NCBI GenBank assembly: GCA_002269645.1
Contig: NIVC01001500.1
Coordinates: 186,001-250,000 of the forward strand
Length of the DNA stretch: 64,000 nt
Direction: 5' to 3'
From: Macrostomum lignano
Taxonomy: Eukaryota
Numbering within the stretch: position 1 is the first letter of the stretch; each line of letters begins with the position of its first letter. Positions 3,540 to 33,717 of this stretch are shown here, piece after piece. The notes beneath the pieces are model-generated. The model saw only the letters and a list, made by a program, of their open reading frames with translations, was not told the DNA's origin and ran no database searches. The position numbers and the translations under genes are program-made.

Positions 3540-3993
3540 GGGAGTCTTTGTTCTCGGCCTTCCAAATACTGACAAAGACATGAACATCTAAAGTACTTCC
3601 GTTTATGTAATTAATGTCTGTTTCTATTAAGTTTTCTCCGTGAGATAGATTTCTGCGACGACCACAATGAGATTCTCTGAATAGAGATTCTTATGGTTGA
3701 GATTCTCAAAGGTGAGATTCTTGATCTTGAAAGTGCAAGCATGTAGAATAAAATTATTATTGATAGGAAGGTTTGTAGATTTAATTATCGTCTATGGTCG
3801 ATATTGTTATACTGTTAAGCTATACTGTTAGAAACACTCGAACTGAAAATTTATCTATAGCGTGCATATATATGAACTATGTTGATATACAATATATATT
3901 GAGCTTGAATTGGAATACAAAATAAATTGAATATATATGCTGAATTAGAATTCTCTCAGTCGAGATTTTCGATCCTGAGTTTCTTATATTTTT

Positions 3994-15555: not shown

Positions 15556-18360
15556 TTCTGTGACTCATGGGTTACTGAGTTGCAAAGGATTAATTGGAGG
15601 TTGTTGGTAGTCCAAGCATCAAGGGGGGGAGTGAGGTTTAGGGTTAAGCCATGGCTTTAAAGGGAAGTTTTGATGATATCTTAGGCTAGCCAGCTGGCTT
15701 TGAGGTCTGATGTTTTCATGCTTTAAACATCATTTTTCTTAGGAAACTTAGTAACTATACAAGGTCAAAAGCTGCATGTGATTTTTTGATTTATTGATAA
15801 AAAATGTGATTCCTTTCTTTGCGCGAAGATTACTAGTGCGTATTTTTAAACCGCCGTCTAGATTGCAACCCACTGCAAGGGTTCCATACGAGATTATATC
15901 AGTAGATTTCGAATCCAGAGTTTCTATACGTTATTTTTACACCTATGCTCTAGAGATTCCACTTAAAAGCTAACAATTATTAACTTAAAAAATAATCTTA
16001 AATCATTTAGAATAAACAAATTAGATTGTTTTAAGCAGGCAAAAGCTTAAACAAAGAGTGCATAGTCATATAGGTGTAATATAGCCGAATAAATATGATT
16101 TATGACCAATGAAAGGCACAGAATCGCCCAATGGTAAAAACACCAAACTAGTACAAAACTGCGCCACTTAGAAGTCACAAAATACAAAAAAATCGAATGA
16201 CAGAAAAGGAAAACACTGCAGCAATGACAAAATAAATCAAACAAGGCAGTTATTAAAATTATCAACTTAGAAATAACAGCAAGCATTATCTATGCAGCTA
16301 GTATAACTCTGAAATATAAAAAACCCAAGATCATGTCAATCATTCTTACAACAACAGCCGTCTTGGCTGTTCAGTCTCATAATTGACCCACAGGATATAC
16401 TCCGCAATAGACGGAGCGGAGGTGAACTGAGAGTTTAATTAACCAGTAGCTTATATTTTCTGTATGACAACCACTGTTCAGATTGGATGCAACTTACCGA
16501 AGAGACAAAACTAATAAGCATATGCAATCATTGATCGATTCGAAAAGACCTGATAATTAATGAACAAAACGACACGAGGGGAAATTAATAACAATATGTT
16601 AAATTCATAAAAAATTACAAGAATACCGAGAGGCATTTTTTGCAAAGAGTGTATTCCATAGAACACAGTTGTTGCAGTCGATTTGGTAACAACAGCCAGT
16701 CAAAATGATTGCGCTAATTTTGTGTAGGTTGGTTCATAAGTAGCCGAACACAATTATAAACACAAAAATACGCTCGTATGCATTAATTTTTTAATCTATC
16801 ATTATTTCTTTTATGTATTGTTAACAAAACTTGTTAGTTTTTAAGTTTTACATTTTCAGTTATATAGGATTTGGGTTCGGCTACTTATGCACCATTCTGT
16901 ATTATAAATTCCATTGCATTCCATCAATAATACATGCATATAGGCAATAAATGACTGACTCGGAACAACGATGCACTCAAAATATGAAAGTCAATTGTGA
17001 CTTTATAAAAGTACGCAACAGACTTGCAATTTGCGCATTCAGGCATTTACCAAGCAAAGCTGAAAGCGTTAAACTTGGGTGAACAAGACATAGCGGACAA
17101 AAAACCCAGGGCATCGGAGCGCTGTTTAAAAAACAATCGATAAACTTCAGTCTCCAAACGGGCCAACCAATCCAATAAGGGAAAAGCTAAATTCCGCTTA
17201 GGCCAAAGAAATAAAGTTAGCCGTTAGTGGGGGTGGGGGCAAGACAGAAAGGAGGGGCGGAGTGGGGTTGGTGCAGTGGTGCTGATTGCTGATAAAAAAG
17301 GCTGACCAAATTACTCCTACCCTGCCGGCTAAATAGCAATAAAACTTGTTTAAAGTCTACAAGGAACGGGGGTGGTGGCCGGAAGGGGTGAGACGTGCCT
17401 GTGGGTTAAGGTTAAAAATCGATATCTCGCCTAACGAAACCTACCCTAGAAAGCTACGAGACGAGTCTGGGGCCTGTTCCGTGCGATATAATGCAATTAA
17501 ATTTTAATTTGTGATGCTTAAAGTCCTACCTAAACACTGCCAAAGCCATATGCACGTCGTAAAGCATTTGTAATTAAGAGTCACACTTAAATTTATTGTC
17601 AACTTAATTTTCACCAGCTTTTTACTGGGACAAAATCTAAATTTAATTACTAGAAACCCACAACATACCACTTTAAGTAGCGAAATACGAACATTTTATT
17701 ACAAAATTTACTATAAAAAACAAAACTTTATAATGATAATGATCAACAATGGAAATTAATAGAAATCAATTACAAAAGCACCTTATAAGGCTTTGCTTCA
17801 GATATCCGATAATATTGAGCTATTGAGCTAATGCTATTATAAGTAGGTAAGTAAGTAGTATAGAAAAAGACGCTTCTAGACCCAGAGCACTTTTTTAATG
17901 ACCGTTTTAAGGGTCTAGAGGGGGGACACGGGGGGTAAATAAAAAAACACATCTAAACACCATTAATACATCTAATCAAATAATGCACTTAACACCCCCC
18001 ACCCTTTTCAGTTTCGGCGAAATTGGGTGTTTAAAAAACAGCTTAAAATTAGCAAAAATGGCTTAAAAATCGCTAAAAACACCAAAAAATCGCAAAATTT
18101 AGGCTTAAAAAAACCGATTTTAAAAACAGCAAAATTTGCCATATCGAAAGCAAAAATGTCTTAAAACAGCTAAAATCGTTATAAAAACATACAAATCGCA
18201 AAAGAAAATTAAAAAAGCCTCCATAAAAAACAATATCTAAATCCAAAAATTTTTAATCCACAAAAATAACACATAAATCCATAATTAATTCCACATAAGC
18301 TCCAAACTAACGTCCACAGAATCGCACCATAGGCACGCGAACCTTCGGCTCGATCGTACC

Positions 18361-20279
18361 GAAATCCACAATAGCAACCGAAATCCACAATAGCAACCGA
18401 AATCCACAATAGCAACCGAAATCCACAATAGCAACCGAAATCCACAATAGCAACCGAAATCCACAATAGCAACCGAAATCCACAATAGCAACCGAAATCC
18501 ACAATAGCAACCGAAATCCACAATAGCAACCGAAATCCACAATAGCAACCGAAATCCACAATAGCAACCGAAATCCACAATAGCAACCGAAATCCACAAT
18601 AGCAACCGAAATCCACAATAGCAACCGAAATCCACAATAGCAACCGAAATCCACAATAGCAACCGAAATCCACAATAGCAACCGAAATCCACAATAGCAA
18701 CCGAAATCCACAATAGCAACCGAAATCCACAATAGCAACCGAAATCCACAATAGCAACCGAAATCCACAATAGCAACCGAAATCCACAATAGCAACCGAA
18801 ATCCACAATAGCAACCGAAATCCACAATAGCAACCGAAATCCACAATAGCAACCGAAATCCACAATAGCAACCGAAATCCACAATAGCAACCGAAATCCA
18901 CAATAGCAACCGAAATCCACAATAGCAACCGAAATCCACAATAGCAACCGAAATCCACAATAGCAACCGAAATCCACAATAGCAACCGAAATCCACAATA
19001 GCAACCGAAATCCACAATAGCAACCGAAATCCACAATAGCAACCGAAATCCACAATAGCAACCGAAATCCATAACAGCAACCGGAATCCATAACAGCAAC
19101 CGGAATCCATAACAGCAACCGGAATCCATAACAGCAACCGGAATCCATAACACCAACCAAAATCCATAACACCAACCAAAATCCATAACAGCAACCGGAA
19201 TCCATAACACCAACCAAAATCCATAACACCAACCAAAATCCATAACAGAAACCGGAAGCCATATTAGTAATCGGAATCCATAACAAAAACCGGAATCCAT
19301 AACACCAACCAAAATCCATAACAGCAACCGGAATCCATAACAGAAACCGGAATCCATAATAGAAACCGGAATCCATAACAGAAACCGGAATCCATAACAG
19401 AAACCGGAATCCATAACAGAAACCGGAATCCATAACAGAACCCGGAATCCATAACAGAAACCGGAATCCATAACAGAACCCGGAATCCATAACAGAAACC
19501 GGAAGCCATATTAGTAATCGGAATCCATAACAGCAACCGGAATCCACAATAGCAACCGGAATCCATAACAGAACCCGGAATCCATAACAGAACCCGGAAT
19601 CCATAACAGAAACCGGAATCCATAACAGAACCCGGAATCCATAACAGAAACCGGAAGCCATATTAGTAATCGGAATCCATAACAAAAACCGGAATCCATA
19701 ACAGAAACCGGAATCCATAATAGAAACCGGAATCCATAACAGAAACCGGAATCCATAACAGAAACCGGAATCCATAACAGAACCCGGAATCCATAACAGA
19801 AACCGGAATCCATAACAGAACCCGGAATCCATAACACCAACCAAAATCCATAACAGAAACCGGAAGCCATATTAGTAATCGGAATCCATAACAAAAACCG
19901 GAATCCATAACAGAAACCGGAATCCACAATAGCAACCAAAATCCATAACAAAAACCAAAATCCATAACAGAACCCGGAATCCATAACAGAAACCGGAAGC
20001 CATATTAGTAATCGGAATCCATAACAAAAACCGGAATCCATAACAGAAACCGGAATCCACAATAGAAACCGGAATCCACAATAGCAACCGAAATCCATAA
20101 CAAAAACCAAAATCCATAACAGAACCCGGAATCCATAACAGAAACCGGAATCCATAACAGCAACCGGAATCCATAACAGCAACCGGAATCCACAATAGCA
20201 ACCGGAATCCACAATAGCAACCGGAATCCATAACAGCAACCGGAATCCATAACAGCAACCGGAATCCACAATAGCAACC
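18361..20279 (+). repeat. 19-bp tandem array, left arm, 101 units (37 identical distal units, then variant units)
   Basis: GAAATCCACAATAGCAACC x37 (18361-19063), then GGAATCCATAACAGAAACC-type variants; 1919 bp = 101x19. Confidence 0.97.
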
Positions 20280-20323
20280 GGAAACCATACTACCTCTAAA
20301 ACTTTAAATTTTTTTCCATAAAA

Positions 20324-20983
20324 ATGGACAGAGATAATTTTGGCGGTAACCACTGCGATAAACACACTTTAAAAATGTTAAAAAGAGCAATAAAAAAAAT
20401 AAAGGCCACCATCGAAGGATCGATAGACTGCAATCGCATTTTGCCACAACTACCACAATCTCTAAAAGAGTTAAGTACATTATTAAAAAACAATACAGAG
20501 ATGCAGAAGCAAATTCCAGATGGTTTAGAAGACTGGATGGAGGGCTTAGATATTGCAATATTAAATAACAGCATATATCTGTTAACAGAATTATGGTCTA
20601 CAACTAACCAATATGTTATTAAAATTAGAGAAAAAGAAAAGAAAGAAAAAGTCCAAACGGAAGCAGAAAGACAAAAAAGAATTTATAAAGAATCTTTAAG
20701 TTTATATAAAGCGGGAATTATTACAACCATACAATATGGTACTAAGCTCCAACAGATTAAACAAATGGTTAATTATTTACTTACTTTTACAAACGATCGC
20801 CCCGAAGGGTCGCGGCCTTCGCCCGATAGGACAAACGCTGCGAACTTACGGTACGACCCGAAGGAGATAAGAAATAAAGTTAAAGAAGATCTTATATTTC
20901 TACATAATAATATTAAATTACTAAAAGAAATAGTAGAAGATATTAACAGCCTTCTACCAACACCGGAGGAAACAGATATCTAA
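20324..20983 (+). CDS. Element ORF-A, 219 aa, unknown function; paralog of the N-terminus of ORF-B
   Basis: Intronless ORF with AAAAATGGA start context; identical mirror copy at 30339-30998. Confidence 0.8.
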   Translation: MDRDNFGGNHCDKHTLKMLKRAIKKIKATIEGSIDCNRILPQLPQSLKELSTLLKNNTEMQKQIPDGLEDWMEGLDIAILNNSIYLLTELWSTTNQYVIKIREKEKKEKVQTEAERQKRIYKESLSLYKAGIITTIQYGTKLQQIKQMVNYLLTFTNDRPEGSRPSPDRTNAANLRYDPKEIRNKVKEDLIFLHNNIKLLKEIVEDINSLLPTPEETDI

Positions 20984-21017
20984 AAATAAGAAATTGTTAA
21001 TTTTTTTATCTATAAAA

Positions 21018-23951
21018 ATGGACACAAATAATTTTAGCGAAAACCAATTCGACAAAATCTTACTACATTCCATAAAAAAAGAAATAATAAATATTAATAG
21101 GTTAATAGATATCTCTATATCGCATTACACCATAGAGCCACAAATAGAAAAAAATATATATAATTTAAATGTTTTAATCGATAAACAGCTAAAGGATATT
21201 AATAATATTAATATATTAGATGGGATAAACACGTGGTTATGTTCCATATCGATGGCAACCATAACAAGAGATATTACTCTTCTAAAGGAAATGCTAGAAA
21301 TAGGTACTAATTATCTTACAAAGATTAGCAAACTTATTCCAGACGATTCCAACGAGGAACTAGAGGAACTAATAATAGATATAGAAGATAGCATGGAGGA
21401 AACAGAGGAAATAGAAGATCGCTCCGACGAAGACTCCGACGAAGACTCCGACGAAGAAATAGAGCAACCAACAGAACCAACACAGCAACCAACAGAACCA
21501 ACACAGCAACCAATAGAACCAACACAGCAACCAATAGAACCAACACGCCCACTAGAGAAAAACCAAATCGACCCCAAAGCTTTTGGACTTAGATCTGGAA
21601 CCGATAAAACCCTGCTCGAGAGAATAGGGCACAAATTACTAATCGAAAACCTAAAGCAAAATAACCTTTTATCCGACGTCGGTAAAATCGACTACACATA
21701 TAAAGAACCAAAACTAAAAGACCAAGTAGCATTAACCGATATATTTTGCGATAATATAATGCTTATTAAAATAACATCTGCACGATCGATAAGAAACTAC
21801 AAAGAAGGAGATGTAATTCCAACCAGATTTTTAATTACCGAACAACTAACTGGAGCCTACAATTCGATTATTCGAGACGCCTTTCGCGATTTTGTAACAC
21901 AACCACATTCTGTAAAGGCAAAACAAGCACTAAATTTACATACCAACACCCACGAGGATTCGATTAACCAGCAGACGATTGCAGGAATTAGAAAGGTTAT
22001 CGCAAAAGACATGGACAGAATTAATGCAAACTTTGGAAAGGATTATGTTGGAGTTACCTACAAGGTAGAATTAGCAGACATACAATTAAAAGAACTTTTA
22101 AATAAATTACCACAATTATTAGAACATCTTAAGCAAGACTATTACTATTTGTTGGACTTCGATATAACACAAGATTTAAATGGTATTTTTAATAAATACG
22201 AGGCGATGGACACACTTAGTGCCATCTTTTCTAACGAGTACAAAATAGTTTCTAACGATAGAACTGTTGGAAGGGACTGCCTTACTTGGTTATACTCTAA
22301 TTGTCGGATAAAGATATATAATAAATTTGTCTGCCAACTAACATCCGGAGGAGTAACAAAGACTCTTGGTAATAACATTTATAATTTTATTAACTGTCCA
22401 GATAAACGATTAAAAGAAACATTCTTAAATCCACTTGCTAAGGAGCATGGTTTTACACGGTTGGAAGCAACAATTTATAATTATAACTACTTTGGTAATA
22501 ACAGACTCTTTAATCCATTATTAGATGCAACGGATGTTATATTGCAACAAAAGGAACATTTACAATATCTACAATTTTATTCCGTATCCTTTACTAAAAT
22601 GTGGAGTAAAATTTCTAACGAGATAGTTAATTCTTGCATAGTTAAATCTCCAGACTTTTTACAAATAGCTTATTATGGCAATTCCTTAACGAGTAAGATA
22701 ATTGGTACACAGATAAAGCTTGTGGATAAAACAGAAGAGCATAAAGAGAGTTTTTTAAATTATGCAATCGCAGCATGTAGTTATAACCAGCTCCCCATTA
22801 ATGTCCTCCTATTGGAACAAGACCCAAAAAATAAAGCCATCGTTAATTGCACACATAAAACATTTTTAAAGCAAGGAAAAACATTTTTTACACAGAGCAC
22901 ATCGCTTTATGCAAAAATTCCAAAAGATGTTAATATAGAAGAGCTGGGATTAATTAGCACAGAAAATATAAAACCAGAAGTGTTAAGAGTTAGAAAGAAT
23001 GCCACAGCACCCCCAATTTACAAATTTACAGAGATTAATAATATAACAACCCCATTCTTAAAACCACTTGCAAAGATTGCAGAAGAATTAGAAGCTGTAG
23101 AACAAGAGCACCAGAAAACTATTACTATTGCAAAACAAAGAAAAGTAATACAAACATATATAGAAAAAAACAAGAAAGAAGTCGACCATGCTAAATACAT
23201 TAAGGATTTATGCGCAGCATTTAAATTAGAACCAGACAATTTTAAAGAAAACACAAAATACGAGATAATTGCTGCACACTTTAACCTCGACATAAAATAT
23301 CCAATTGTGTTATTAATGGCTAAAATGGCGGATGGGGAATTAAAACCATTTTATCTTAAAGGTATTAATAAACAAAAATTTATTAACTTCTATAAAAATA
23401 AAATATTAGATAAGGAAACAACGTTTGGACATTTTACATACACTAATAAATATAAGCGAAATGTTGCTATAGTCTATATCCTAAACACAACAATTCTAAA
23501 CATAACAACAGGTAAACAAATCTCTTACAAAGGAAACACGTTTACAGCAATCGATGGGTTTAAAACCAATTACAACGATCTTAACGAAGAAATTATTAAA
23601 AAAGAAGATATACAAGGTGCACGCGCGGTAAGAAATATTTTAGAAATGGAGGACAAAAGTATACTAAACAATATAAAAGTAGCACATTGTAAACATATAG
23701 AGGAACTAGAAGATGGATTCGAGGACAACGTTACAACCATTATGGTTACGATACATAGAAATAAAACACGATATATTTTTAAACTAGCAACAAAAGAAGA
23801 CCCATTTGTATCCAACGAGTTTATGGAAGAAGAGATAAGAAAGCAAAGATTAAATCTCGATTATAAATTCCATTTAACAGTCGCTAATTATAAAATAACC
23901 AAAAATCGAAAAAAGGAAAGAAGTGTTTATTTAGTAAGTCTTTTGCAATAA
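21018..23951 (+). CDS. Element ORF-B, 977 aa from the first ATG; putative Rep_trans/gpII-like rolling-circle initiator, with acidic and PTEPTQQ-repeat linker
   Basis: Long intronless ORF with motifs DFDITQD (22155), RIKIYNK (Tyr codon 22317) and TRLEA (22458). The family call is by motif resemblance only. Confidence 0.8.
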   Translation: MDTNNFSENQFDKILLHSIKKEIININRLIDISISHYTIEPQIEKNIYNLNVLIDKQLKDINNINILDGINTWLCSISMATITRDITLLKEMLEIGTNYLTKISKLIPDDSNEELEELIIDIEDSMEETEEIEDRSDEDSDEDSDEEIEQPTEPTQQPTEPTQQPIEPTQQPIEPTRPLEKNQIDPKAFGLRSGTDKTLLERIGHKLLIENLKQNNLLSDVGKIDYTYKEPKLKDQVALTDIFCDNIMLIKITSARSIRNYKEGDVIPTRFLITEQLTGAYNSIIRDAFRDFVTQPHSVKAKQALNLHTNTHEDSINQQTIAGIRKVIAKDMDRINANFGKDYVGVTYKVELADIQLKELLNKLPQLLEHLKQDYYYLLDFDITQDLNGIFNKYEAMDTLSAIFSNEYKIVSNDRTVGRDCLTWLYSNCRIKIYNKFVCQLTSGGVTKTLGNNIYNFINCPDKRLKETFLNPLAKEHGFTRLEATIYNYNYFGNNRLFNPLLDATDVILQQKEHLQYLQFYSVSFTKMWSKISNEIVNSCIVKSPDFLQIAYYGNSLTSKIIGTQIKLVDKTEEHKESFLNYAIAACSYNQLPINVLLLEQDPKNKAIVNCTHKTFLKQGKTFFTQSTSLYAKIPKDVNIEELGLISTENIKPEVLRVRKNATAPPIYKFTEINNITTPFLKPLAKIAEELEAVEQEHQKTITIAKQRKVIQTYIEKNKKEVDHAKYIKDLCAAFKLEPDNFKENTKYEIIAAHFNLDIKYPIVLLMAKMADGELKPFYLKGINKQKFINFYKNKILDKETTFGHFTYTNKYKRNVAIVYILNTTILNITTGKQISYKGNTFTAIDGFKTNYNDLNEEIIKKEDIQGARAVRNILEMEDKSILNNIKVAHCKHIEELEDGFEDNVTTIMVTIHRNKTRYIFKLATKEDPFVSNEFMEEEIRKQRLNLDYKFHLTVANYKITKNRKKERSVYLVSLLQ

Positions 23952-24441
23952 ATATATTTTTATTTTTTTACAAATGCGAATACCAAATACGAAATGCAAA
24001 TACAGAATGCGAAATGCGAATACCAAACATCCAAATAAAAAATAAAAACATGTTTATACACAAATTAAATTAAATTATTTAAGTTTTGTTTTACAACTTC
24101 TATATCTTTTAAACAACAACTTCTTAAACTATCTAAATTAATAATTTCCACATTTTTAATTCGAGGACAACGTTACAACCATTGTGGTAACGATATATTT
24201 TTAAACTAGCAACAAAAGAAGACCCATTTGTATCCAACGAGTTTATGGAAGAAGAGATAAGAAACCAAAGATTAAATCTCGATTATAAATTCCGTTTAAC
24301 AGTCGCTAATTATAAAATAACCAAGAATCGAAAAAAGGAAAGAAGTGTTTATTTAGTAAGTCTTTAGCAATAAATATATTTTTATTTTTTTACAAACACA
24401 AATACAAATACAAAATACGAAATATCCAAATAAAAACATGT

Positions 24442-24843
24442 TTATACACAAATTAAATTATTTAAGTTTTGTTTTACAACATCTTTATCTTTTAAACAAC
24501 AACTTCTTAAACTATCTAAATTAATAATTTCCACATTTTTAACCACGGATGTAGCTTTGCGAGCATCGAACTCGTCCTGCATATACATTGGCATGCTAAT
24601 TGTTGGAAGGGCAAGTAGGTTTCTTATATAATTATTAATTAAATAAATAGCATAGGGGTAACAAGGATATCCATGCTTTTTAGACATCCGCGTATACACA
24701 TTTATATCTTGGAGAGAGTCCATTTTAAAAAGAATTTTATCCTCTACATTTAATTCTTCTTTAGTTACATAAAATATTACATCCTTGGTAGATGGACAGG
24801 AGTTCGCATCCAAAATAACTTTATGGATTAATCCTCGATCCAT
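24442..24843 (-). CDS. Element ORF-D, 133 aa, unknown function; paralog of ORF-C
   Basis: AAAAATGGA start; mirror copy at 26480-26881. Confidence 0.75.
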   Translation of the reverse strand: MDRGLIHKVILDANSCPSTKDVIFYVTKEELNVEDKILFKMDSLQDINVYTRMSKKHGYPCYPYAIYLINNYIRNLLALPTISMPMYMQDEFDARKATSVVKNVEIINLDSLRSCCLKDKDVVKQNLNNLICV

Positions 24844-24904
24844 TTTTTACAATATATTTTTTATTATAAAATTTGTTTATTTTGCAACACACCAAGCTTG
24901 TCTT

Positions 24905-25247
24905 TTACACCAACAGATCCATAACTTTATTTTTTTTATTAATTAGTGGTGTAACCTTAAATGTTTCTTCCACACTAATTATATCCACACTGCTAATAGT
25001 CGACATAACTTTCCCATCTTCGAACTCCTCCACACCCAACAACGCTGGAGGCATCGGTATGTGTGGGAGACCAACTAATTTTCTAACATATATCTTAACA
25101 AGCCAAACACCATAAGGATAGCAACCATCGCACTTTATTTTTGGTTTTTTAAGATATATTCTTATATCCTCCACGTTATCTTTTAAGTAGAATCTTTTTA
25201 AAGAAAGCTTTTCTTTAGTTACATAAAAGCAGTCTTTTTTAGTATTA
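24905..25247 (-). pseudogene. 5'-truncated left-arm copy of ORF-C
   Basis: Identity with 26020-26418 stops at 25247; the ATG and upstream motif are absent. Confidence 0.7.
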
Positions 25248-25280
25248 CTCCTAATATAACCTAAAATACTAAAAATATTA

Positions 25281-25620
25281 AATAAAACCAATTATAGTTA
25301 AATAATACCAATTATAGTTAAATAATACCAATTATAGTTAAGTGCGTTCCGCGCTCGCGTGTTTTTATCTCTTTTAACTGTCTTGTATGCCCTGTGTTGT
25401 GCGCCCATGGGCGCTGCGCGCCCACGGTGGTATTCTTTTTTATATTTTATATTTTATATTTTATATTTTATATTTTATATTTTATATTTTATATTTTATA
25501 TTTTAATTTTATATTTTATATTTTATATTTTATATTTTATATTTTATATATTTTATATATTTTATATATTTTATATATTTTATATTTTTTATATTTTATA
25601 TATTTTATATATTTTATGTG
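25281..25620. promoter_or_regulatory. Origin-like module: 3x20-bp direct repeats (25281-25340), GC palindrome GCGCCCATGGGCGC (25401-25414), pure A/T tract (~25436-25617)
   Basis: The motifs are read directly; the origin function is inferred. Confidence 0.5.
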
Positions 25621-25651
25621 TTGTATTTGGTGGAGAAAAAAAGTAAACCTT

Positions 25652-25990
25652 TTAATCGTCGATATCTCGCAAAACAACAACCCTTTCTTTCTTTTTAGAC
25701 TCGTTGGACTTTAACTCGAACGCATACAAAATAAATCTGTAGTTGTAATTTATTTTTTCGATTTGTTTCTCGAAATAATTGTTAGAAATATAAAGCTCTT
25801 TTGTGTTTTCTATCTGGAAAATATAGCGCATGCGGTTCCTAAACTTCTTTCTCCCTTGTGCAACAACAAAATATACTCCTGGTGGAAGGGATTCTAATCT
25901 TTTGCAGTTTTGTGTTATTAACTTACATTGGAGTTGTTTTAATATCCAATCTTGGGGGACATCTTTATCGAACTCGTGGATGGTATCCAT
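25652..25990 (-). CDS. Element ORF-E, 112 aa from the AAAAATGGA start (139 aa from the upstream ATG); single copy; homologous to the ORF-B C-terminus
   Basis: CKRLESL..G..RNRMRYIF..SN..KKERV versus ORF-B CKHIEEL..G..RNKTRYIF..SN..KKERSV. Confidence 0.75.
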   Translation of the reverse strand: MDTIHEFDKDVPQDWILKQLQCKLITQNCKRLESLPPGVYFVVAQGRKKFRNRMRYIFQIENTKELYISNNYFEKQIEKINYNYRFILYAFELKSNESKKKERVVVLRDIDD

Positions 25991-26019
25991 TTTTTTATTA
26001 TTAAAATATATTATGTAAA

Positions 26020-26418
26020 ATGGAAGATAATGTTGTGCATGTAGTAACTTTACATCCTTTGGTAGCTCCAAATATTAATACTAAAAAAGACTGCTTTTAT
26101 GTAACTAAAGAAAAGCTTTCTTTAAAAAGATTCTACTTAAAAGATAACGTGGAGGATATAAGAATATATCTTAAAAAACCAAAAATAAAGTGCGATGGTT
26201 GCTATCCTTATGGTGTTTGGCTTGTTAAGATATATGTTAGAAAATTAGTTGGTCTCCCACACATACCGATGCCTCCAGCGTTGTTGGGTGTGGAGGAGTT
26301 CGAAGATGGGAAAGTTATGTCGACTATTAGCAGTGTGGATATAATTAGTGTGGAAGAAACATTTAAGGTTACACCACTAATTAATAAAAAAAATAAAGTT
26401 ATGGATCTGTTGGTGTAA
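26020..26418 (+). CDS. Element ORF-C, 132 aa, complete copy; unknown function
   Basis: AAAATGGA start; the upstream motif is shared with ORF-D. Confidence 0.75.
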   Translation: MEDNVVHVVTLHPLVAPNINTKKDCFYVTKEKLSLKRFYLKDNVEDIRIYLKKPKIKCDGCYPYGVWLVKIYVRKLVGLPHIPMPPALLGVEEFEDGKVMSTISSVDIISVEETFKVTPLINKKNKVMDLLV

Positions 26419-26479
26419 AAGACAAGCTTGGTGTGTTGCAAAATAAACAAATTTTATAATAAAAAATATATTGTAAAAA

Positions 26480-26881
26480 ATGGATCGAGGATTAATCCAT
26501 AAAGTTATTTTGGATGCGAACTCCTGTCCATCTACCAAGGATGTAATATTTTATGTAACTAAAGAAGAATTAAATGTAGAGGATAAAATTCTTTTTAAAA
26601 TGGACTCTCTCCAAGATATAAATGTGTATACGCGGATGTCTAAAAAGCATGGATATCCTTGTTACCCCTATGCTATTTATTTAATTAATAATTATATAAG
26701 AAACCTACTTGCCCTTCCAACAATTAGCATGCCAATGTATATGCAGGACGAGTTCGATGCTCGCAAAGCTACATCCGTGGTTAAAAATGTGGAAATTATT
26801 AATTTAGATAGTTTAAGAAGTTGTTGTTTAAAAGATAAAGATGTTGTAAAACAAAACTTAAATAATTTAATTTGTGTATAA
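26480..26881 (+). CDS. Element ORF-D, right-arm copy, 133 aa
   Basis: Mirror of 24442-24843. Confidence 0.75.
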   Translation: MDRGLIHKVILDANSCPSTKDVIFYVTKEELNVEDKILFKMDSLQDINVYTRMSKKHGYPCYPYAIYLINNYIRNLLALPTISMPMYMQDEFDARKATSVVKNVEIINLDSLRSCCLKDKDVVKQNLNNLICV

Positions 26882-27371
26882 ACATGTTTTTATTTGGATA
26901 TTTCGTATTTTGTATTTGTATTTGTGTTTGTAAAAAAATAAAAATATATTTATTGCTAAAGACTTACTAAATAAACACTTCTTTCCTTTTTTCGATTCTT
27001 GGTTATTTTATAATTAGCGACTGTTAAACGGAATTTATAATCGAGATTTAATCTTTGGTTTCTTATCTCTTCTTCCATAAACTCGTTGGATACAAATGGG
27101 TCTTCTTTTGTTGCTAGTTTAAAAATATATCGTTACCACAATGGTTGTAACGTTGTCCTCGAATTAAAAATGTGGAAATTATTAATTTAGATAGTTTAAG
27201 AAGTTGTTGTTTAAAAGATATAGAAGTTGTAAAACAAAACTTAAATAATTTAATTTAATTTGTGTATAAACATGTTTTTATTTTTTATTTGGATGTTTGG
27301 TATTCGCATTTCGCATTCTGTATTTGCATTTCGTATTTGGTATTCGCATTTGTAAAAAAATAAAAATATAT

Positions 27372-30304
27372 TTATTGCAAAAGACTTACTAAATAAACAC
27401 TTCTTTCCTTTTTTCGATTTTTGGTTATTTTATAATTAGCGACTGTTAAATGGAATTTATAATCGAGATTTAATCTTTGCTTTCTTATCTCTTCTTCCAT
27501 AAACTCGTTGGATACAAATGGGTCTTCTTTTGTTGCTAGTTTAAAAATATATCGTGTTTTATTTCTATGTATCGTAACCATAATGGTTGTAACGTTGTCC
27601 TCGAATCCATCTTCTAGTTCCTCTATATGTTTACAATGTGCTACTTTTATATTGTTTAGTATACTTTTGTCCTCCATTTCTAAAATATTTCTTACCGCGC
27701 GTGCACCTTGTATATCTTCTTTTTTAATAATTTCTTCGTTAAGATCGTTGTAATTGGTTTTAAACCCATCGATTGCTGTAAACGTGTTTCCTTTGTAAGA
27801 GATTTGTTTACCTGTTGTTATGTTTAGAATTGTTGTGTTTAGGATATAGACTATAGCAACATTTCGCTTATATTTATTAGTGTATGTAAAATGTCCAAAC
27901 GTTGTTTCCTTATCTAATATTTTATTTTTATAGAAGTTAATAAATTTTTGTTTATTAATACCTTTAAGATAAAATGGTTTTAATTCCCCATCCGCCATTT
28001 TAGCCATTAATAACACAATTGGATATTTTATGTCGAGGTTAAAGTGTGCAGCAATTATCTCGTATTTTGTGTTTTCTTTAAAATTGTCTGGTTCTAATTT
28101 AAATGCTGCGCATAAATCCTTAATGTATTTAGCATGGTCGACTTCTTTCTTGTTTTTTTCTATATATGTTTGTATTACTTTTCTTTGTTTTGCAATAGTA
28201 ATAGTTTTCTGGTGCTCTTGTTCTACAGCTTCTAATTCTTCTGCAATCTTTGCAAGTGGTTTTAAGAATGGGGTTGTTATATTATTAATCTCTGTAAATT
28301 TGTAAATTGGGGGTGCTGTGGCATTCTTTCTAACTCTTAACACTTCTGGTTTTATATTTTCTGTGCTAATTAATCCCAGCTCTTCTATATTAACATCTTT
28401 TGGAATTTTTGCATAAAGCGATGTGCTCTGTGTAAAAAATGTTTTTCCTTGCTTTAAAAATGTTTTATGTGTGCAATTAACGATGGCTTTATTTTTTGGG
28501 TCTTGTTCCAATAGGAGGACATTAATGGGGAGCTGGTTATAACTACATGCTGCGATTGCATAATTTAAAAAACTCTCTTTATGCTCTTCTGTTTTATCCA
28601 CAAGCTTTATCTGTGTACCAATTATCTTACTCGTTAAGGAATTGCCATAATAAGCTATTTGTAAAAAGTCTGGAGATTTAACTATGCAAGAATTAACTAT
28701 CTCGTTAGAAATTTTACTCCACATTTTAGTAAAGGATACGGAATAAAATTGTAGATATTGTAAATGTTCCTTTTGTTGCAATATAACATCCGTCGCATCT
28801 AATAATGGATTAAAGAGTCTGTTATTACCAAAGTAGTTATAATTATAAATTGTTGCTTCCAACCGTGTAAAACCATGCTCCTTAGCAAGTGGATTTAAGA
28901 ATGTTTCTTTTAATCGTTTATCTGGACAGTTAATAAAATTATAAATGTTATTACCAAGAGTCTTTGTTACTCCTCCGGATGTTAGTTGGCAGACAAATTT
29001 ATTATATATCTTTATCCGACAATTAGAGTATAACCAAGTAAGGCAGTCCCTTCCAACAGTTCTATCGTTAGAAACTATTTTGTACTCGTTAGAAAAGATG
29101 GCACTAAGTGTGTCCATCGCCTCGTATTTATTAAAAATACCATTTAAATCTTGTGTTATATCGAAGTCCAACAAATAGTAATAGTCTTGCTTAAGATGTT
29201 CTAATAATTGTGGTAATTTATTTAAAAGTTCTTTTAATTGTATGTCTGCTAATTCTACCTTGTAGGTAACTCCAACATAATCCTTTCCAAAGTTTGCATT
29301 AATTCTGTCCATGTCTTTTGCGATAACCTTTCTAATTCCTGCAATCGTCTGCTGGTTAATCGAATCCTCGTGGTGTTGGTATGTAAATTTAGTGCTTGTT
29401 TTGCCTTTACAGAATGTGGTTGTGTTACAAAATCGCGAAAGGCGTCTCGAATAATCGAATTGTAGGCTCCAGTTAGTTGTTCGGTAATTAAAAATCTGGT
29501 TGGAATTACATCTCCTTCTTTGTAGTTTCTTATCGATCGTGCAGATGTTATTTTAATAAGCATTATATTATCGCAAAATATATCGGTTAATGCTACTTGG
29601 TCTTTTAGTTTTGGTTCTTTATATGTGTAGTCGATTTTACCGACGTCGGATAAAAGGTTATTTTGCTTTAGGTTTTCGATTAGTAATTTGTGCCCTATTC
29701 TCTCGAGCAGGGTTTTATCGGTTCCAGATCTAAGTCCAAAAGCTTTGGGGTCGATTTGGTTTTTCTCTAGTGGGCGTGTTGGTTCTATTGGTTGCTGTGT
29801 TGGTTCTATTGGTTGCTGTGTTGGTTCTGTTGGTTGCTGTGTTGGTTCTGTTGGTTGCTCTATTTCTTCGTCGGAGTCTTCGTCGGAGTCTTCGTCGGAG
29901 CGATCTTCTATTTCCTCTGTTTCCTCCATGCTATCTTCTATATCTATTATTAGTTCCTCTAGTTCCTCGTTGGAATCGTCTGGAATAAGTTTGCTAATCT
30001 TTGTAAGATAATTAGTACCTATTTCTAGCATTTCCTTTAGAAGAGTAATATCTCTTGTTATGGTTGCCATCGATATGGAACATAACCACGTGTTTATCCC
30101 ATCTAATATATTAATATTATTAATATCCTTTAGCTGTTTATCGATTAAAACATTTAAATTATATATATTTTTTTCTATTTGTGGCTCTATGGTGTAATGC
30201 GATATAGAGATATCTATTAACCTATTAATATTTATTATTTCTTTTTTTATGGAATGTAGTAAGATTTTGTCGAATTGGTTTTCGCTAAAATTATTTGTGT
30301 CCAT
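27372..30304 (-). pseudogene. Right-arm copy of ORF-B, split by a 1-bp deletion at ~29372
   Basis: Left ACCAACACCCACGAGG versus right ACCAACACCACGAGG; gives 357-aa and 646-aa ORFs. Could be a homopolymer sequencing error. Confidence 0.75.
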
Positions 30305-30338
30305 TTTTATAGATAAAAAAATTAACAATTTCTTATTT

Positions 30339-30998
30339 TTAGATATCTGTTTCCTCCGGTGTTGGTAGAAGGCTGTTAATATCTTCTACTATTTCTTTTA
30401 GTAATTTAATATTATTATGTAGAAATATAAGATCTTCTTTAACTTTATTTCTTATCTCCTTCGGGTCGTACCGTAAGTTCGCAGCGTTTGTCCTATCGGG
30501 CGAAGGCCGCGACCCTTCGGGGCGATCGTTTGTAAAAGTAAGTAAATAATTAACCATTTGTTTAATCTGTTGGAGCTTAGTACCATATTGTATGGTTGTA
30601 ATAATTCCCGCTTTATATAAACTTAAAGATTCTTTATAAATTCTTTTTTGTCTTTCTGCTTCCGTTTGGACTTTTTCTTTCTTTTCTTTTTCTCTAATTT
30701 TAATAACATATTGGTTAGTTGTAGACCATAATTCTGTTAACAGATATATGCTGTTATTTAATATTGCAATATCTAAGCCCTCCATCCAGTCTTCTAAACC
30801 ATCTGGAATTTGCTTCTGCATCTCTGTATTGTTTTTTAATAATGTACTTAACTCTTTTAGAGATTGTGGTAGTTGTGGCAAAATGCGATTGCAGTCTATC
30901 GATCCTTCGATGGTGGCCTTTATTTTTTTTATTGCTCTTTTTAACATTTTTAAAGTGTGTTTATCGCAGTGGTTACCGCCAAAATTATCTCTGTCCAT
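30339..30998 (-). CDS. Element ORF-A, right-arm copy, 219 aa
   Basis: Same translation as 20324-20983. Confidence 0.8.
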   Translation of the reverse strand: MDRDNFGGNHCDKHTLKMLKRAIKKIKATIEGSIDCNRILPQLPQSLKELSTLLKNNTEMQKQIPDGLEDWMEGLDIAILNNSIYLLTELWSTTNQYVIKIREKEKKEKVQTEAERQKRIYKESLSLYKAGIITTIQYGTKLQQIKQMVNYLLTFTNDRPEGSRPSPDRTNAANLRYDPKEIRNKVKEDLIFLHNNIKLLKEIVEDINSLLPTPEETDI

Positions 30999-31042
30999 TT
31001 TTATGGAAAAAAATTTAAAGTTTTAGAGGTAGTATGGTTTCC

Positions 31043-32847: not shown

Positions 32848-33717
32848 GGTACGATCGAGCCGAAGGTTCGCGTGCCTATGGTGCGATTCTGTGGACGTTA
32901 GTTTGGAGCTTATGTGGAATTAATTATGGATTTATGTGTTATTTTTGTGGATTAAAAATTTTTGGATTTAGATATTGTTTTTTATGGAGGCTTTTTTAAT
33001 TTTCTTTTGCGATTTGTATGTTTTTATAACGATTTTAGCTGTTTTAAGACATTTTTGCTTTCGATATGGCAAATTTTGCTGTTTTTAAAATCGGTTTTTT
33101 TAAGCCTAAATTTTGCGATTTTTTGGTGTTTTTAGCGATTTTTAAGCCATTTTTGCTAATTTTAAGCTGTTTTTTAAACACCCAATTTCGCCGAAACTGA
33201 AAAGGGTGGGGGGTGTTAAGTGCATTATTTGATTAGATGTATTAATGGTGTTTAGATGTGTTTTTTTATTTACCCCCCGTGTCCCCCCTCTAGACCCTCA
33301 AAACGGTCATTAAAAAAGTGCTCTGGGTCCAGAAGCGTCTTTTTCTATACTACTTAAGTAGGTTGATATATTACATTCAAAATATAAACAAAAATGCTGT
33401 TCGTAGTAATACAAAATAAAACAAAAACACAGGATCGATGGGGAGAATGAGGAAAAGCAAACGGGAATACAAGACAATTGACGAACTTACCTAAAATGGC
33501 TGAAGCGCCTCGTCATCTAATTGAAAAAAAAACTCGCCACTCAGCATGCATAATGAAATGAAAATCAGCGAGATTGTTAAAAACAACTAAAATAATTAGC
33601 CGCTCAATCAGTCTGATCGGCGTTTTGTTTTTTTGTCGTCATTTTCCGAATTGCTCTCGACGACTTCGTTGACGGGACCAGCCTGGGCGGGGTCATTAGG
33701 AAATGGGATTGTGTTCA

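What the first reader, a model, noticed from the sequence alone, without database searches (positions are those of the whole stretch)
22100..22480. ORF-B carries a Rep_trans / inovirus gpII-like catalytic motif set, unexpected in a eukaryotic element
Seen: LLDFDITQD, then 48 aa later SNCRIKIYNK, then ~47 aa later FTRLEA. Knowledge: pT181-family Rep_trans initiators use RLDxAxD (metal ligands), RIYNK/RIYDK (catalytic Tyr) and a downstream RxE. This fold differs from the HUH Reps of CRESS viruses, Helitrons and Replitrons. Inference: ORF-B is a non-HUH rolling-circle nickase (Tyr ~434) fused to extra N- and C-terminal domains. The Arg of the first motif is replaced by Asp, so the call is tentative.
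Basis: partly seen in the sequence, partly recalled or inferred. Interest (0 to 1): 0.87.

Follow-up and report, generated by a model that had tools for sequence, protein, structure and literature searches.

The report
Rep_trans-like tyrosine nickase in eukaryotic element
A 985-residue gene inside a 15.5-kb palindromic insertion in a eukaryotic genome belongs to a large undescribed protein family. Its conserved core most resembles, in predicted fold and in active-site residues, the non-HUH (Rep_trans) rolling-circle nickases so far reported from bacteria, with distant archaeal relatives.

Summary
The three motifs are at the stated coordinates: LLDFDITQD at 22149-22175, SNCRIKIYNK at 22296-22325 and FTRLEA at 22452-22469. 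They lie in ORF-B (20994-23951, + strand).

They are not chance strings. ORF-B belongs to a family of at least 905 clusters at 50% identity. Across 169 aligned sequences the Tyr is 163/163. D253, D390, D394, K444, R489 and E491 are 97-100% conserved.

No sequence method links the family to Rep_trans, Phage_CRI or DUF7845. Pfam, PHROGs, NCBIfam, a profile search of PDB sequences and hhalign were all negative (hhalign probability below 1%).

Two confident AlphaFold models of members about 24% identical to each other (pLDDT 88.7 and 94.6) both have staphylococcal Rep_trans initiator chain 4cwe_A as their best PDB neighbour. TATA-binding proteins follow. The scores are marginal (E 1.6e-2 and 1.8e-3; TM about 0.3).

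The conserved residues lie on predicted beta-strands in the published Rep_trans order: N', I, III (YxK), IV (RxE).

Relatives occur in insects, Mortierellomycota and chytrid fungi and a ciliate. They are almost absent from 185,579 prokaryotic genomes.

Verdict: ORF-B is probably a TBP-fold, Rep_trans-like tyrosine nickase. It is a structural relative, not a PF02486 member. Confidence is about 0.55.

The parts
20994..23951 (+). ORF-B. It is 985 aa from the TTG at 20994, or 977 aa from the first ATG at 21018. This is the intact copy of the Rep_trans-like protein.
   Evidence: 22 homologues found with E down to 8e-144; at least 905 cluster representatives
21018..21572 (+). N-terminal extension of ORF-B (about 185 aa). 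It is absent from all close homologues. Its first ~100 aa are paralogous to the N-terminus of ORF-A. It contains an acidic tract and four copies of a 21-nt coding repeat at 21463-21546.
   Evidence: alignment A1; BLASTP 31% identity over 107 aa, E 2e-10; TRF
21573..22742 (+). Conserved core domain (390 aa) modelled as a TBP-like alpha/beta fold. This is the putative nickase domain.
   Evidence: AF2 pLDDT 88.7, pTM 0.86; Foldseek PDB ranks 1-4 are 4cwe, 4cwc and 4cij
21744..21755 (+). FCDN (aa 251-254). D253 is invariant and is the candidate equivalent of the Rep_trans motif N' Asp (RepC D46).
   Evidence: D 142/142; lies in predicted strand 58-69 of the model; motif definition from PMC5714925
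22149..22175 (+). LLDFDITQD (aa 386-394). D390 and D394 are the candidate equivalents of Rep_trans motif I (RepC D142 and D146). D388 takes the place of the motif's Arg.
   Evidence: D390 160/163, D394 161/163, T392 149/163; predicted strand 191-203; RepC columns
22296..22325 (+). SNCRIKIYNK (aa 435-444). Tyr442 is the putative catalytic nucleophile in a YxK motif, equivalent to RepC Y191 and K193.
   Evidence: Y 163/163, K444 162/163, K440 161/163; predicted strand 244-250; the best hhalign local match of A2 is RepC 184-193, 7 of 10 identical but not significant
22452..22469 (+). FTRLEA (aa 487-492). R489-x-E491 is the candidate equivalent of Rep_trans motif IV (RepC R212 and E214).
   Evidence: R 155/158, E 154/157; predicted strand 294-302
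22743..23951 (+). C-terminal ~400 aa of ORF-B. It is conserved in the long (~780-930 aa) subfamily. Its last ~90 aa form a module that also occurs as a separate small ORF.
   Evidence: alignment A1; BLASTP to the centre ORF, 34% identity over 82 aa, E 2e-10
20324..20983 (+). ORF-A (219 aa), directly upstream of ORF-B. Its N-terminus is paralogous to the ORF-B N-terminal extension. It has no family hit.
27372..30328 (-). Second, mirrored copy of ORF-B in the other arm. It is broken by one frameshift (a single one-base indel) and carries one further substitution relative to the intact copy. It has no premature stop other than those caused by the frameshift.
30339..30998 (-). Mirrored copy of ORF-A, identical to the first copy.
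17852..33356 (.). The whole element, a 15.5-kb palindrome. The arms are about 17852-25247 and 26076-33356, around an asymmetric 828-nt centre. It is inserted between sequences that carry eukaryotic exons.
   Evidence: the repeat finder I1-I3; junction reads; arylsulfatase and SPRY exons in the flanks
18358..20289 (.). Array of about 102 copies of a 19-nt unit near the left outer end. The mirrored array lies at 31033-32850 with about 96 copies.
   Evidence: TRF
31033..32850 (.). Mirrored 19-nt array near the right outer end.
   Evidence: TRF
24442..25291 (-). Two paralogous small ORFs, 133 aa at 24442-24843 and 128 aa at 24905-25291, lying tail-to-tail with ORF-B. They are mirrored at 26020-26881 and have no family hit.
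   Evidence: (36% identity over 96 aa)
25248..26075 (.). Asymmetric centre of the palindrome. It contains three 20-nt repeats, a GC-rich palindromic island (25341-25430), a (TTTTATA)n tract (25438-25628) and a 139-aa ORF (25652-26071, - strand) paralogous to the ORF-B C-terminal module.

Best explanation
ORF-B encodes a multidomain protein of a large, previously undescribed eukaryote-associated family. Its conserved ~330-390-aa core is predicted to adopt the TBP-like alpha/beta fold of the Rep_trans rolling-circle initiators. The core carries an invariant Tyr (Tyr442 from the TTG start, Tyr434 from the ATG) in an R-x-K-x-Y-N-K strand. It also carries invariant acidic residues D253, D390/D394 and E491, with R489 next to E491. 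These residues follow the same linear order as Rep_trans motifs N', I, III and IV. The most likely function is a metal-dependent single-strand DNA nicking and joining enzyme that attacks a phosphodiester with the Tyr and stays attached to the 5' end, as RepC and RepD do. Here it would serve the element that carries it, a 15.5-kb palindrome with 19-nt arrays at both outer ends and an origin-like asymmetric centre. What is shown: the motif positions, their invariance, the confidence of the predicted fold, the ranking of PDB neighbours, the element anatomy and the taxonomic distribution. What is inferred: catalysis, metal binding, the nick site and the replication or mobility mode. One tentative idea comes from the palindromic dimer form and from the flip-flop end segment in related contigs. 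The nickase may resolve hairpin or turn-around intermediates rather than drive simple circle-to-circle replication.
For: Motifs verified. Invariance across 169 sequences: Y 163/163, D253 142/142, D390 160/163, D394 161/163, K444 162/163, R489 155/158, E491 154/157. AF2 model of the window core has pLDDT 88.7 and pTM 0.86. Its Foldseek PDB ranks 1-4 are the Rep_trans initiators 4cwe_A, 4cwc_A and 4cij_D/B, followed by TBP. An independent model of P0021, about 24% identical, has pLDDT 94.6. Its rank 1 is again 4cwe_A, with E 1.8e-3 and probability 0.92, and TBP is at ranks 4 and 6. BFVD hits are TBP-fold proteins and Inoviridae proteins, the same kind of hits reported for the archaeal Rep-Arvir family (PMC13107129). 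All motif residues lie on predicted beta-strands, as described for the Rep_trans catalytic Tyr (PMC5714925). The same columns are conserved in 8 diverse plasmid Rep_trans proteins: Y191, K193, R212, E214 and D146 are 8/8 and D142 is 7/8. The context is a mobile element. The window copy is a palindromic insertion. Most relatives lie on small multi-copy-like contigs. Fungal members are paired with a DDE_Tnp_4 transposase.
Against: There is no sequence-level link. Pfam, PHROGs and NCBIfam found nothing. HMM searches against PDB sequences found nothing. hhalign probability was below 1%. The Foldseek scores are marginal: E 1.6e-2 and 1.8e-3, TM 0.24-0.34 and rmsd 10-15 A. Generic alpha/beta folds (ACT domains, SIMPL, SAM lyase) score almost as well in the second search. 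The motif III Glu of Rep_trans is Gln or Cys in this family. No nick-site hairpin was identified. In fungi a DDE transposase next door could supply all the DNA cleavage.
Confidence: 0.55

Rival explanations
1. The core is a non-catalytic TBP-like DNA-binding domain. The protein would be an accessory or targeting factor of transposons, comparable to the Myb-like second ORF of PIF/Harbinger elements or the TBP-like domain of poxvirus-type VETF-L. It would recognise element ends or repeats without cutting DNA.
For: The fungal ~550-aa subfamily is consistently adjacent to a DDE_Tnp_4 transposase gene in L035, L037, L038-L041 and L022. The best BFVD hits are VETF-large-subunit-like and TBP proteins, with E down to 8e-5. 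TBP chains rank just below Rep_trans in both PDB searches. The window element carries about 100 copies of a 19-nt unit that could be binding sites.
Against: A DNA-binding saddle does not explain an absolutely invariant Tyr together with three or four near-invariant acidic residues on the sheet; acidic clusters are unusual on a DNA-contact surface unless they bind metal. The long subfamily, which includes the window element, has no DDE gene nearby.
Confidence: 0.2
2. The protein is an enzyme, but of another kind. An alpha/beta sandwich would carry a Tyr and acidic active site that resembles Rep_trans only by convergence, for example a different phosphotransferase, a lyase, or a recombinase-like protein acting on double-stranded DNA.
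For: Profile-profile comparison is negative. The second Foldseek list contains SIMPL-like, SAM-lyase and ACT-domain folds with E values of 4e-3 to 2e-2. TM scores to Rep_trans are low.
Against: The same specific PDB family ranks first for two members about 24% identical to each other, out of 350,542 chains. The four conserved motifs follow the Rep_trans order, and the YxK motif is 7 of 10 identical to RepC 184-193. The gene always sits in mobile-element-like contexts.
Confidence: 0.15
3. ORF-B is a true PF02486 or Phage_CRI member recently acquired from a bacterial plasmid or a filamentous phage.
For: Motif III closely resembles that of pT181 RepC.
Against: None of 95 scanned members gives a Pfam hit. 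Only one 3.6-kb MAG contig among 185,579 prokaryotic species encodes a relative. No relative was found in IMG/VR. The family is deep and diverse within eukaryotes.
Confidence: 0.02
4. The locus is an assembly artefact, such as a fold-back chimera, or a dead repeat, and the ORF has no function.
For: The perfect palindrome could arise from fold-back reads. One of the two copies is frameshifted.
Against: The arms differ by six 19-nt units, one substitution and one indel. The asymmetric centre carries its own ORF. Independent metagenome contigs L004-L006 show the same arm-centre-arm layout, with the central segment in both orientations. The intact 985-aa ORF keeps every family-invariant residue.
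Confidence: 0.05

Closest known systems
Rep_trans rolling-circle initiators (PF02486): pT181 RepC, RepD/RepDE (PDB 4CWC, 4CWE), pSTK1 Rep (4CIJ), and the NicK-type relaxases
   Same: It is the best PDB structural neighbour for two divergent members. Both have a TBP-like fold (PMC13107129). Both have a Tyr in a beta-strand within YxK, and the window has ...IKIYNK where RepC has ...IRIYNK. The conserved Asp (N'), D-x-[A/T]-x-D (I) and R-x-E (IV) occur in the same order.
   Different: No HMM or HMM-HMM similarity was found. The core is about 100 aa longer, with insertions between N' and I and between III and IV. The Arg of motif I is Asp or Leu, and the Glu of motif III is Gln or Cys. The proteins are 550-1200 aa with extra domains. 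The hosts are eukaryotic, and the element is a palindromic insertion rather than a small circular plasmid.
Rep-Arvir (DUF7845, PF25227) of archaeal pleolipoviruses and plasmids (PMC13107129)
   Same: This is the same situation: a TBP-fold, Tyr-bearing initiator related to Rep_trans only at the structural level, with the same kind of Foldseek hits (viral TBPs such as A0A2N9QVX7, and Inoviridae proteins).
   Different: There is no PF25227 hit. The motif around the Tyr differs, since the window family keeps the canonical YxK. The host domain is different, and no central wHTH was demonstrated here.
Filamentous-phage gpII / Phage_CRI (PF05144)
   Same: The review PMC5714925 says these proteins share Rep_trans-like motifs. 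Weak BFVD matches to uncharacterised Inoviridae proteins were found, with E 1e-3 to 2e-3.
   Different: There is no PF05144 hit in any member, and no named gpII came back from any search.
TATA-binding protein and the TBP-like domain of NCLDV VETF-large-subunit-like proteins
   Same: The fold class is shared.
   Different: Those proteins are DNA-bending factors without a conserved Tyr and acidic set. The sequences are unrelated.
PIF/Harbinger two-gene transposons (DDE_Tnp_4 transposase plus a Myb-like protein)
   Same: The fungal subfamily forms compact two-gene units with a DDE_Tnp_4 transposase.
   Different: The partner here is a 550-aa TBP-fold protein, not a Myb/SANT protein. The window element and the long subfamily have no DDE gene.
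Dictyostelium Ddp2-family nuclear plasmids (one large Rep ORF plus long inverted repeats). This is a lead from memory only.
   Same: Both have one very large 'Rep' ORF of about 800-900 aa, long inverted repeats around a short unique segment, and a eukaryotic nuclear setting.
   Different: This was not tested. The Ddp5 record (NC_001889) and the descriptive paper could not be fetched, and no Dictyostelium protein appeared among the 30 clusters whose sources were looked up.
HUH endonucleases (CRESS Rep, Helitron RepHel, parvovirus NS1)
   Same: The inferred chemistry is the same: a Tyr nucleophile, metal dependence and a 5'-linked intermediate. The palindromic dimer layout recalls parvovirus replicative forms.
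   Different: There is no HUH motif or HUH Pfam hit. The fold is different, and AAV Rep68 appears only at rank 42-47 with E about 0.7.

Membership tests
Rep_trans (PF02486) | Match to the Pfam model at or above the gathering score | tested here: not met
   No PF02486 hit at E<=10 in ORF-B or in 94 other members. As a positive control, pT181 RepC hits PF22477 and PF02486.
Rep_trans (PF02486) | Profile-profile similarity to a Rep_trans alignment | tested here: not met
   hhalign of the 169-sequence family profile (Neff 6.9), or of A2, against 16 Rep_trans sequences (Neff 2.4) gave probability below 1% and E 0.17-0.2. The template alignment is shallow and no secondary-structure terms were used, so this test is weak.
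Rep_trans (PF02486) | TBP-like catalytic fold as in RepDE and RepSTK1 | tested here: inconclusive
   Rep_trans chains are the top PDB hits for two models, at E 1.6e-2 and 1.8e-3, probability 0.47 and 0.92. TM is only 0.24-0.34 and no hit reaches E<=1e-3.
Rep_trans (PF02486) | Catalytic Tyr in a beta-strand within motif III, YxK | tested here: met
   Y442 is 163/163 and K444 is 162/163. The Tyr lies in predicted strand 244-250 of the model. The motif definition comes from PMC5714925.
Rep_trans (PF02486) | Glu at Y+5 of motif III (YxKxxE) | tested here: not met
   That position is Gln in 81, Cys in 62 and other residues in 19 of 162 sequences. It is Glu in 8 of 8 plasmid Rep_trans proteins.
Rep_trans (PF02486) | Acidic metal ligands in motifs N' (D), I (D) and IV (RxE), in that order | tested here: met
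   D253 is 142/142, D390 is 160/163, D394 is 161/163, R489 is 155/158 and E491 is 154/157, and all lie on predicted strands. This is a match in order and pattern only; the 3-D clustering could not be measured.
Rep_trans (PF02486) | Arg of motif I (RxD) | tested here: not met
   The equivalent position is D388 (Asp 138/163), or Leu in the other register.
Rep_trans (PF02486) | Site-specific nicking with a covalent 5'-phosphotyrosine link; a cognate origin hairpin | not testable with these tools
   No activity data can be obtained here. Only a short GC-rich palindrome was seen in the centre of the element.
Phage_CRI / gpII (PF05144) | Match to the Pfam model | tested here: not met
   No hit in 95 members. 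The only matches are weak BFVD structural hits to unnamed Inoviridae proteins.
Rep-Arvir (DUF7845, PF25227) | Match to the Pfam model | tested here: not met
   No hit in 95 members.
HUH endonucleases | HUH and Y motifs on an RRM-like fold; HUH-family Pfam hit | tested here: not met
   No Pfam hit. HUH structures appear only at E about 0.7.
PIF/Harbinger-type two-gene transposon | Adjacent DDE_Tnp_4 transposase gene | tested here: not met
   None of the window element's five main ORFs has a DDE hit. The feature is met only in the fungal compact subfamily, in L022, L035 and L037-L041.
Dictyostelium Ddp2-family plasmid Rep | Sequence similarity to the Ddp2, Ddp5 or Ddp6 Rep | not tested
   The record and the paper were not retrievable.

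The most novel reading that the evidence does not exclude
ORF-B and its 900 or more relatives would be the eukaryotic branch of the TBP-fold (Rep_trans / Rep-Arvir) tyrosine-nickase superfamily. They would define a previously unrecognised class of eukaryotic mobile or episomal DNA elements, found in animals, early-diverging fungi and ciliates, that are built around this enzyme instead of an HUH Rep, a DDE transposase or a tyrosine recombinase. Some of these elements would have palindromic or flip-flop architecture, which suggests hairpin or turn-around replication intermediates.
Probability: 0.4. Interest if true: 0.9.

Novelty: new variant of a known kind. Interest (0 to 1): 0.8.

Why it matters
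The literature held here states that Rep_trans-type initiators are restricted to bacteria, with distant archaeal relatives recognised only in 2026 (PMC13107129). All known eukaryotic rolling-circle elements (Helitrons, CRESS viruses, parvoviruses) use the unrelated HUH fold.

A eukaryote-wide family with the Rep_trans fold and active-site set would place this enzyme superfamily in all three domains of life. It would also add a new protein class to the catalogue of eukaryotic mobile-element enzymes.

It would give a functional handle on hundreds of orphan 'hypothetical proteins'. These occur in insect, fungal and ciliate genomes and on small metagenomic contigs.

Finally, it raises a testable question: why is the same core coupled to a DDE transposase in some fungi but sits in palindromic multi-gene elements elsewhere?

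Tried and rejected
**Sequence searches that found nothing relevant**
- hmmscan against Pfam of ORF-B and its neighbours, and of 22 + 72 family members.
- PHROGs and NCBIfam.
- phmmer and hmmsearch against PDB sequences with ORF-B, A1 and A2.

**Profile-profile comparison**
- I read pT181 RepC from the public record NC_001393.
- I added seven diverse plasmid Rep_trans genes found by tblastn.
- hhalign in local and global mode gave no significant alignment.
- A protein search with RepC returned only homologues of 81% identity or more among the 120 listed, so it did not deepen the template.

**Tests of bacterial, phage or viral origin**
- IMG/VR gave 0 relatives.
- The prokaryotic genomes gave one 3.6-kb MAG contig.

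**Tests of element form**
- A circular plasmid or virus: none of 22 small contigs has a terminal overlap.
- Bacterial-type promoters and terminators in the element: counts equal chance.
- Short hairpins as nick-site candidates: only two 10-nt palindromes.

**Other checks**
- Rfam over the whole window found nothing.
- The Dictyostelium Ddp2/Ddp5 Rep comparison could not be done because the record and the paper were not retrievable.
- Spatial clustering of the motif residues could not be measured because model coordinates are not exposed to the script tool.


Full report
**1. The observation**

ORF-B runs from 20994 to 23951 on the + strand. It is 985 aa from a TTG codon; the first ATG is at 21018.

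LLDFDITQD is at nt 22149-22175, SNCRIKIYNK at 22296-22325 and FTRLEA at 22452-22469.

**2. The motifs are family invariants, not chance strings**

A word-indexed search found 22 homologues of about 780 aa, with E down to 8e-144. They come from Schistocerca americana, Planococcus citri, Cacopsylla and many small unnamed contigs.

An exhaustive HMMER search with the core alignment A2 found 905 cluster representatives at 50% identity with E<=1e-3. Of these, 554 had E<=1e-10.

I aligned the window core and 168 relatives to the profile. Conservation of the key residues is:

| Residue (TTG numbering) | Conserved in |
|---|---|
| Tyr442 | 163/163 |
| K444 | 162/163 |
| K440 | 161/163 |
| R438 | 154/164 |
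| D390 | 160/163 |
| D394 | 161/163 |
| D388 | 138/163 |
| R489 | 155/158 |
| E491 | 154/157 |

**3. Sequence-level tests against known families all failed**

- Pfam gave no Rep_trans (PF02486), Phage_CRI (PF05144) or DUF7845 (PF25227) hit at E<=10. This covers ORF-B, the 22 first homologues and 72 divergent representatives.
- PHROGs and NCBIfam gave nothing.
- Profiles A1 and A2 found no Rep_trans chain among PDB sequences at E<=10.

For a profile-profile test I needed real Rep_trans sequences. I read pT181 RepC from the public record NC_001393; as a control, it hits PF22477 and PF02486. I added seven plasmid Rep_trans genes of 23-85% identity from Enterococcus, Lactobacillus, Bacillus and Staphylococcus, plus eight close homologues of RepC from the protein search, 16 sequences in all.

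hhalign of the family profile (Neff 6.9) or of A2 against this alignment (Neff 2.4) gave probability below 1%. Two details are worth noting:
- The best local match of A2 was exactly SNCRIKIYNK against RepC 184-193, which contains Tyr191 (7 of 10 identical).
- The best match of the deep profile paired the family's G-x-TRLE strand with RepC's GFTRLD strand.

Neither match is significant, and the template alignment was shallow.

**4. Structure**

The AlphaFold2 model of the window core (390 aa, 21 sequences) has pLDDT 88.7 and pTM 0.86. In Foldseek against 350,542 PDB chains, ranks 1-4 were the Rep_trans initiators 4cwe_A, 4cwc_A (RepDE) and 4cij_D/B (pSTK1 Rep). Archaeal and eukaryotic TATA-binding proteins came next. 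The scores are weak: E 0.016-0.044, probability 0.38-0.47, TM 0.24-0.34.

Against BFVD, the best hits were NCLDV VETF-large-subunit-like proteins, viral TBPs and uncharacterised Inoviridae proteins. This is the same hit pattern reported for the archaeal Rep-Arvir family. That paper also states that Rep_trans adopts the TBP fold and had been considered restricted to bacteria (PMC13107129).

As an independent test I modelled P0021 aa 1-352. This is a fungal-type member about 24% identical to the window core. The alignment had 80 sequences, and the model has pLDDT 94.6 and pTM 0.90. Its top PDB hit was again 4cwe_A (E 1.8e-3, probability 0.92), with TBP at ranks 4 and 6. Generic alpha/beta folds (SIMPL, SAM lyase, ACT domains) were close behind.

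The conclusion on fold is that a TBP-like fold is well supported. Rep_trans is the nearest solved relative for two divergent members, but the scores are not decisive on their own.

**5. Active-site correspondence**

The review PMC5714925 defines the Rep_trans motifs as N' (a conserved D), I (RxD), II, III (YxKxxE) and IV (W/LxRxE). It states that the Tyr sits in a beta-strand and that D, D and E bind the metal. PMC13107129 names D46, D142, Y191 and E214 for RepDE. In the pT181 RepC that I read from the record, these numbers fall on SFD, TRLD, RIYNK and WRVE.

| Rep_trans motif | RepC residue(s) | ORF-B residue(s) | Predicted strand in the model |
|---|---|---|---|
| N' | D46 | D253 | 58-69 |
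| I | D142 / D146 | D390 / D394 | 191-203 |
| III | Y191 / K193 | Y442 / K444 | 244-250 |
| IV | R212 / E214 | R489 / E491 | 294-302 |

The order is the same in both families. The differences are:
- The Glu of motif III is Gln or Cys.
- The N'-to-I and III-to-IV spacings are longer (135 against 96 aa, and 49 against 23 aa).

I could not measure 3-D distances because model coordinates are not exposed.

**6. The setting of the gene**

ORF-B lies in a 15.5-kb palindrome, 17852-33356. Its arms are about 17852-25247 and 26076-33356, 98-100% identical, around an asymmetric 828-nt centre. Reading inward, each arm has:
- about 500 nt of unique sequence;
- about 100 copies of a 19-nt unit;
- ORF-A (219 aa);
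- ORF-B;
- two paralogous small ORFs on the opposite strand.

The centre has three 20-nt repeats, a GC-rich palindromic island, a (TTTTATA)n tract and a 139-aa ORF.

The second copy of ORF-B (27372-30328, - strand) is broken by one frameshift and differs by one further substitution. The two ORF-A copies are identical. The arms also differ by six 19-nt units. This, together with the asymmetric centre, argues against a fold-back artefact.

The flanks carry an arylsulfatase exon and a SPRY exon, so the host is a eukaryote, probably an animal. A 7-nt direct repeat (AGTAGGT) may flank the element, but it is offset by 3 nt on the left side, so it is not conclusive.

The N-terminal ~185 aa of ORF-B are absent from its homologues and are paralogous to ORF-A. 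The C-terminal ~90-aa module is paralogous to the centre ORF. In L003 two downstream ORFs are likewise paralogues of the big protein's C-terminal region.

**7. Relatives and their contexts**

*Distribution.* Named sources are insects, Mortierellomycota (Mortierella, Podila, Linnemannia, Haplosporangium, Actinomortierella, Gryganskiella), the chytrid Blyttiomyces and the ciliate Tetrahymena utriculariae. Most other members are on metagenome or SRA contigs of 1-9 kb. A pattern-plus-tblastn scan found no relative in IMG/VR. It found one 3.6-kb MAG contig among 185,579 prokaryotic species.

*Three contexts were seen:*
- **(a) P0186-type elements.** These contigs are 7-9 kb with six or seven unknown genes. 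Three of the four contigs (L004-L006) end in a 595-nt segment flanked by perfect inverted repeats that are cut at the assembler's k-mer length, and the segment occurs in both orientations. This is the same arm-centre-arm logic as in the window.
- **(b) Fungal ~550-aa members.** These are paired with a DDE_Tnp_4 (PIF/Harbinger-type) transposase gene in seven loci.
- **(c) Solitary intronless ORFs in insect chromosomes**.

No contig showed a circular overlap.

**8. Interpretation**

The best-supported reading (about 0.55) is a TBP-fold, Rep_trans-like tyrosine nickase that serves a eukaryotic mobile element. Catalysis, metal binding, the nick site and the replication mode are all inferred.

The main rival (about 0.2) is a non-catalytic TBP-like DNA-binding accessory protein. 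The pairing with a DDE transposase in fungi favours it; the invariant Tyr and acidic set argues against it. A convergent enzyme of another kind (about 0.15) cannot be excluded without a residue-level superposition. Recent acquisition of a true PF02486 gene and an assembly artefact are both unlikely.

**9. Novelty**

Searches of the held literature found no description of a eukaryotic Rep_trans-like family. The 2026 Rep-Arvir paper states that Rep_trans had been thought restricted to bacteria. I rate this a new variant of a known kind, with a substantial chance (about 0.4) that it marks a new class of eukaryotic elements.

One untested lead from memory is the Ddp2 family of Dictyostelium nuclear plasmids, which have a single large Rep ORF and long inverted repeats. 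I could not fetch their sequences.

Noticed in passing
window 17852-33356: The gene sits in a 15.5-kb near-perfect palindrome with an asymmetric 828-nt centre (25248-26075). The arms differ only by six 19-nt repeat units, one substitution and one one-base indel. A possible 7-nt flanking direct repeat (AGTAGGT) is offset by 3 nt on the left.
   Followed up: partly
window 18358-20289 and 31033-32850: About 102 and about 96 tandem copies of a 19-nt unit lie in mirror orientation near both outer ends of the element. They could be iteron-like binding sites or telomere-like ends; their role is unknown.
   Followed up: no
window 20324-20983 vs 21018-21340: The N-terminus of ORF-A is paralogous to the N-terminal extension of ORF-B (31% identity over 107 aa, E 2e-10). 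No other family member has this extension.
   Followed up: yes
window 25652-26071 (-) vs 23660-23951 (+); L003 3669-5140: The small ORF in the palindrome centre is a paralogue of ORF-B's C-terminal ~90-aa module. In L003 two downstream ORFs are likewise paralogues of the big protein's C-terminal region, and in P0022 the module is repeated. Stand-alone copies of a C-terminal domain therefore recur in this family.
   Followed up: partly
window 25278-25628: The centre has an origin-like layout: three 20-nt repeats, a ~90-nt GC-rich island with a 14-nt perfect palindrome, then about 190 nt of (TTTTATA)n.
   Followed up: no
L004 7996-8854, L005 6997-7795, L006 6866-7740: A 595-nt segment carrying a 175-aa gene is flanked by perfect inverted repeats truncated at about the assembler's k-mer length. 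It is found in both orientations in different samples, which is a flip-flop or turn-around signature.
   Followed up: partly
L022 2044-3471; L035 2034-3359; L037 6567-7820; L038 3779-5092 (also L039-L041): The fungal ~550-aa subfamily is consistently adjacent to a DDE_Tnp_4 (PIF/Harbinger-type) transposase gene. One of these has a C-terminal chromodomain. This is a two-gene unit with a non-Myb partner.
   Followed up: partly
L001 6-305 vs 2944-3243; 3450-3900: Upstream of the gene lies a 300-nt stretch 71% identical to the gene's own 3' part, suggesting diverged head-to-tail copies about 2.9 kb apart. Four ~120-nt repeats follow the gene.
   Followed up: no
L002 (JAGTUS010000002.1, filed as a Candidatus Baumannia MAG): The contig carrying P0003 has about 30% GC, (AT)n microsatellites and few genes (HSP20, ThiG, radical SAM). 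It looks more like host insect DNA than a streamlined symbiont, so the bacterial label is doubtful.
   Followed up: partly
window 14421-15547, 34531-36233, 36861-37668, 37675-38877: Several unrelated minisatellites (29-nt, 31-nt and 19/20-nt units) flank the element. The long 'ORFs' over these arrays and over the 19-nt arrays are repeat artefacts.
   Followed up: no
window 2808-3539 (+) and ~38000-39400 (-): Host exons are present: the C-terminal part of an arylsulfatase (Sulfatase_C, E 1e-27) and a SPRY-domain exon.
   Followed up: partly
window 21463-21546 (mirrored at 29776-29859): Four copies of a 21-nt coding repeat give an (E/Q)PTQQP(T/I) repeat next to an acidic tract in the ORF-B N-terminal extension.
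   Followed up: no
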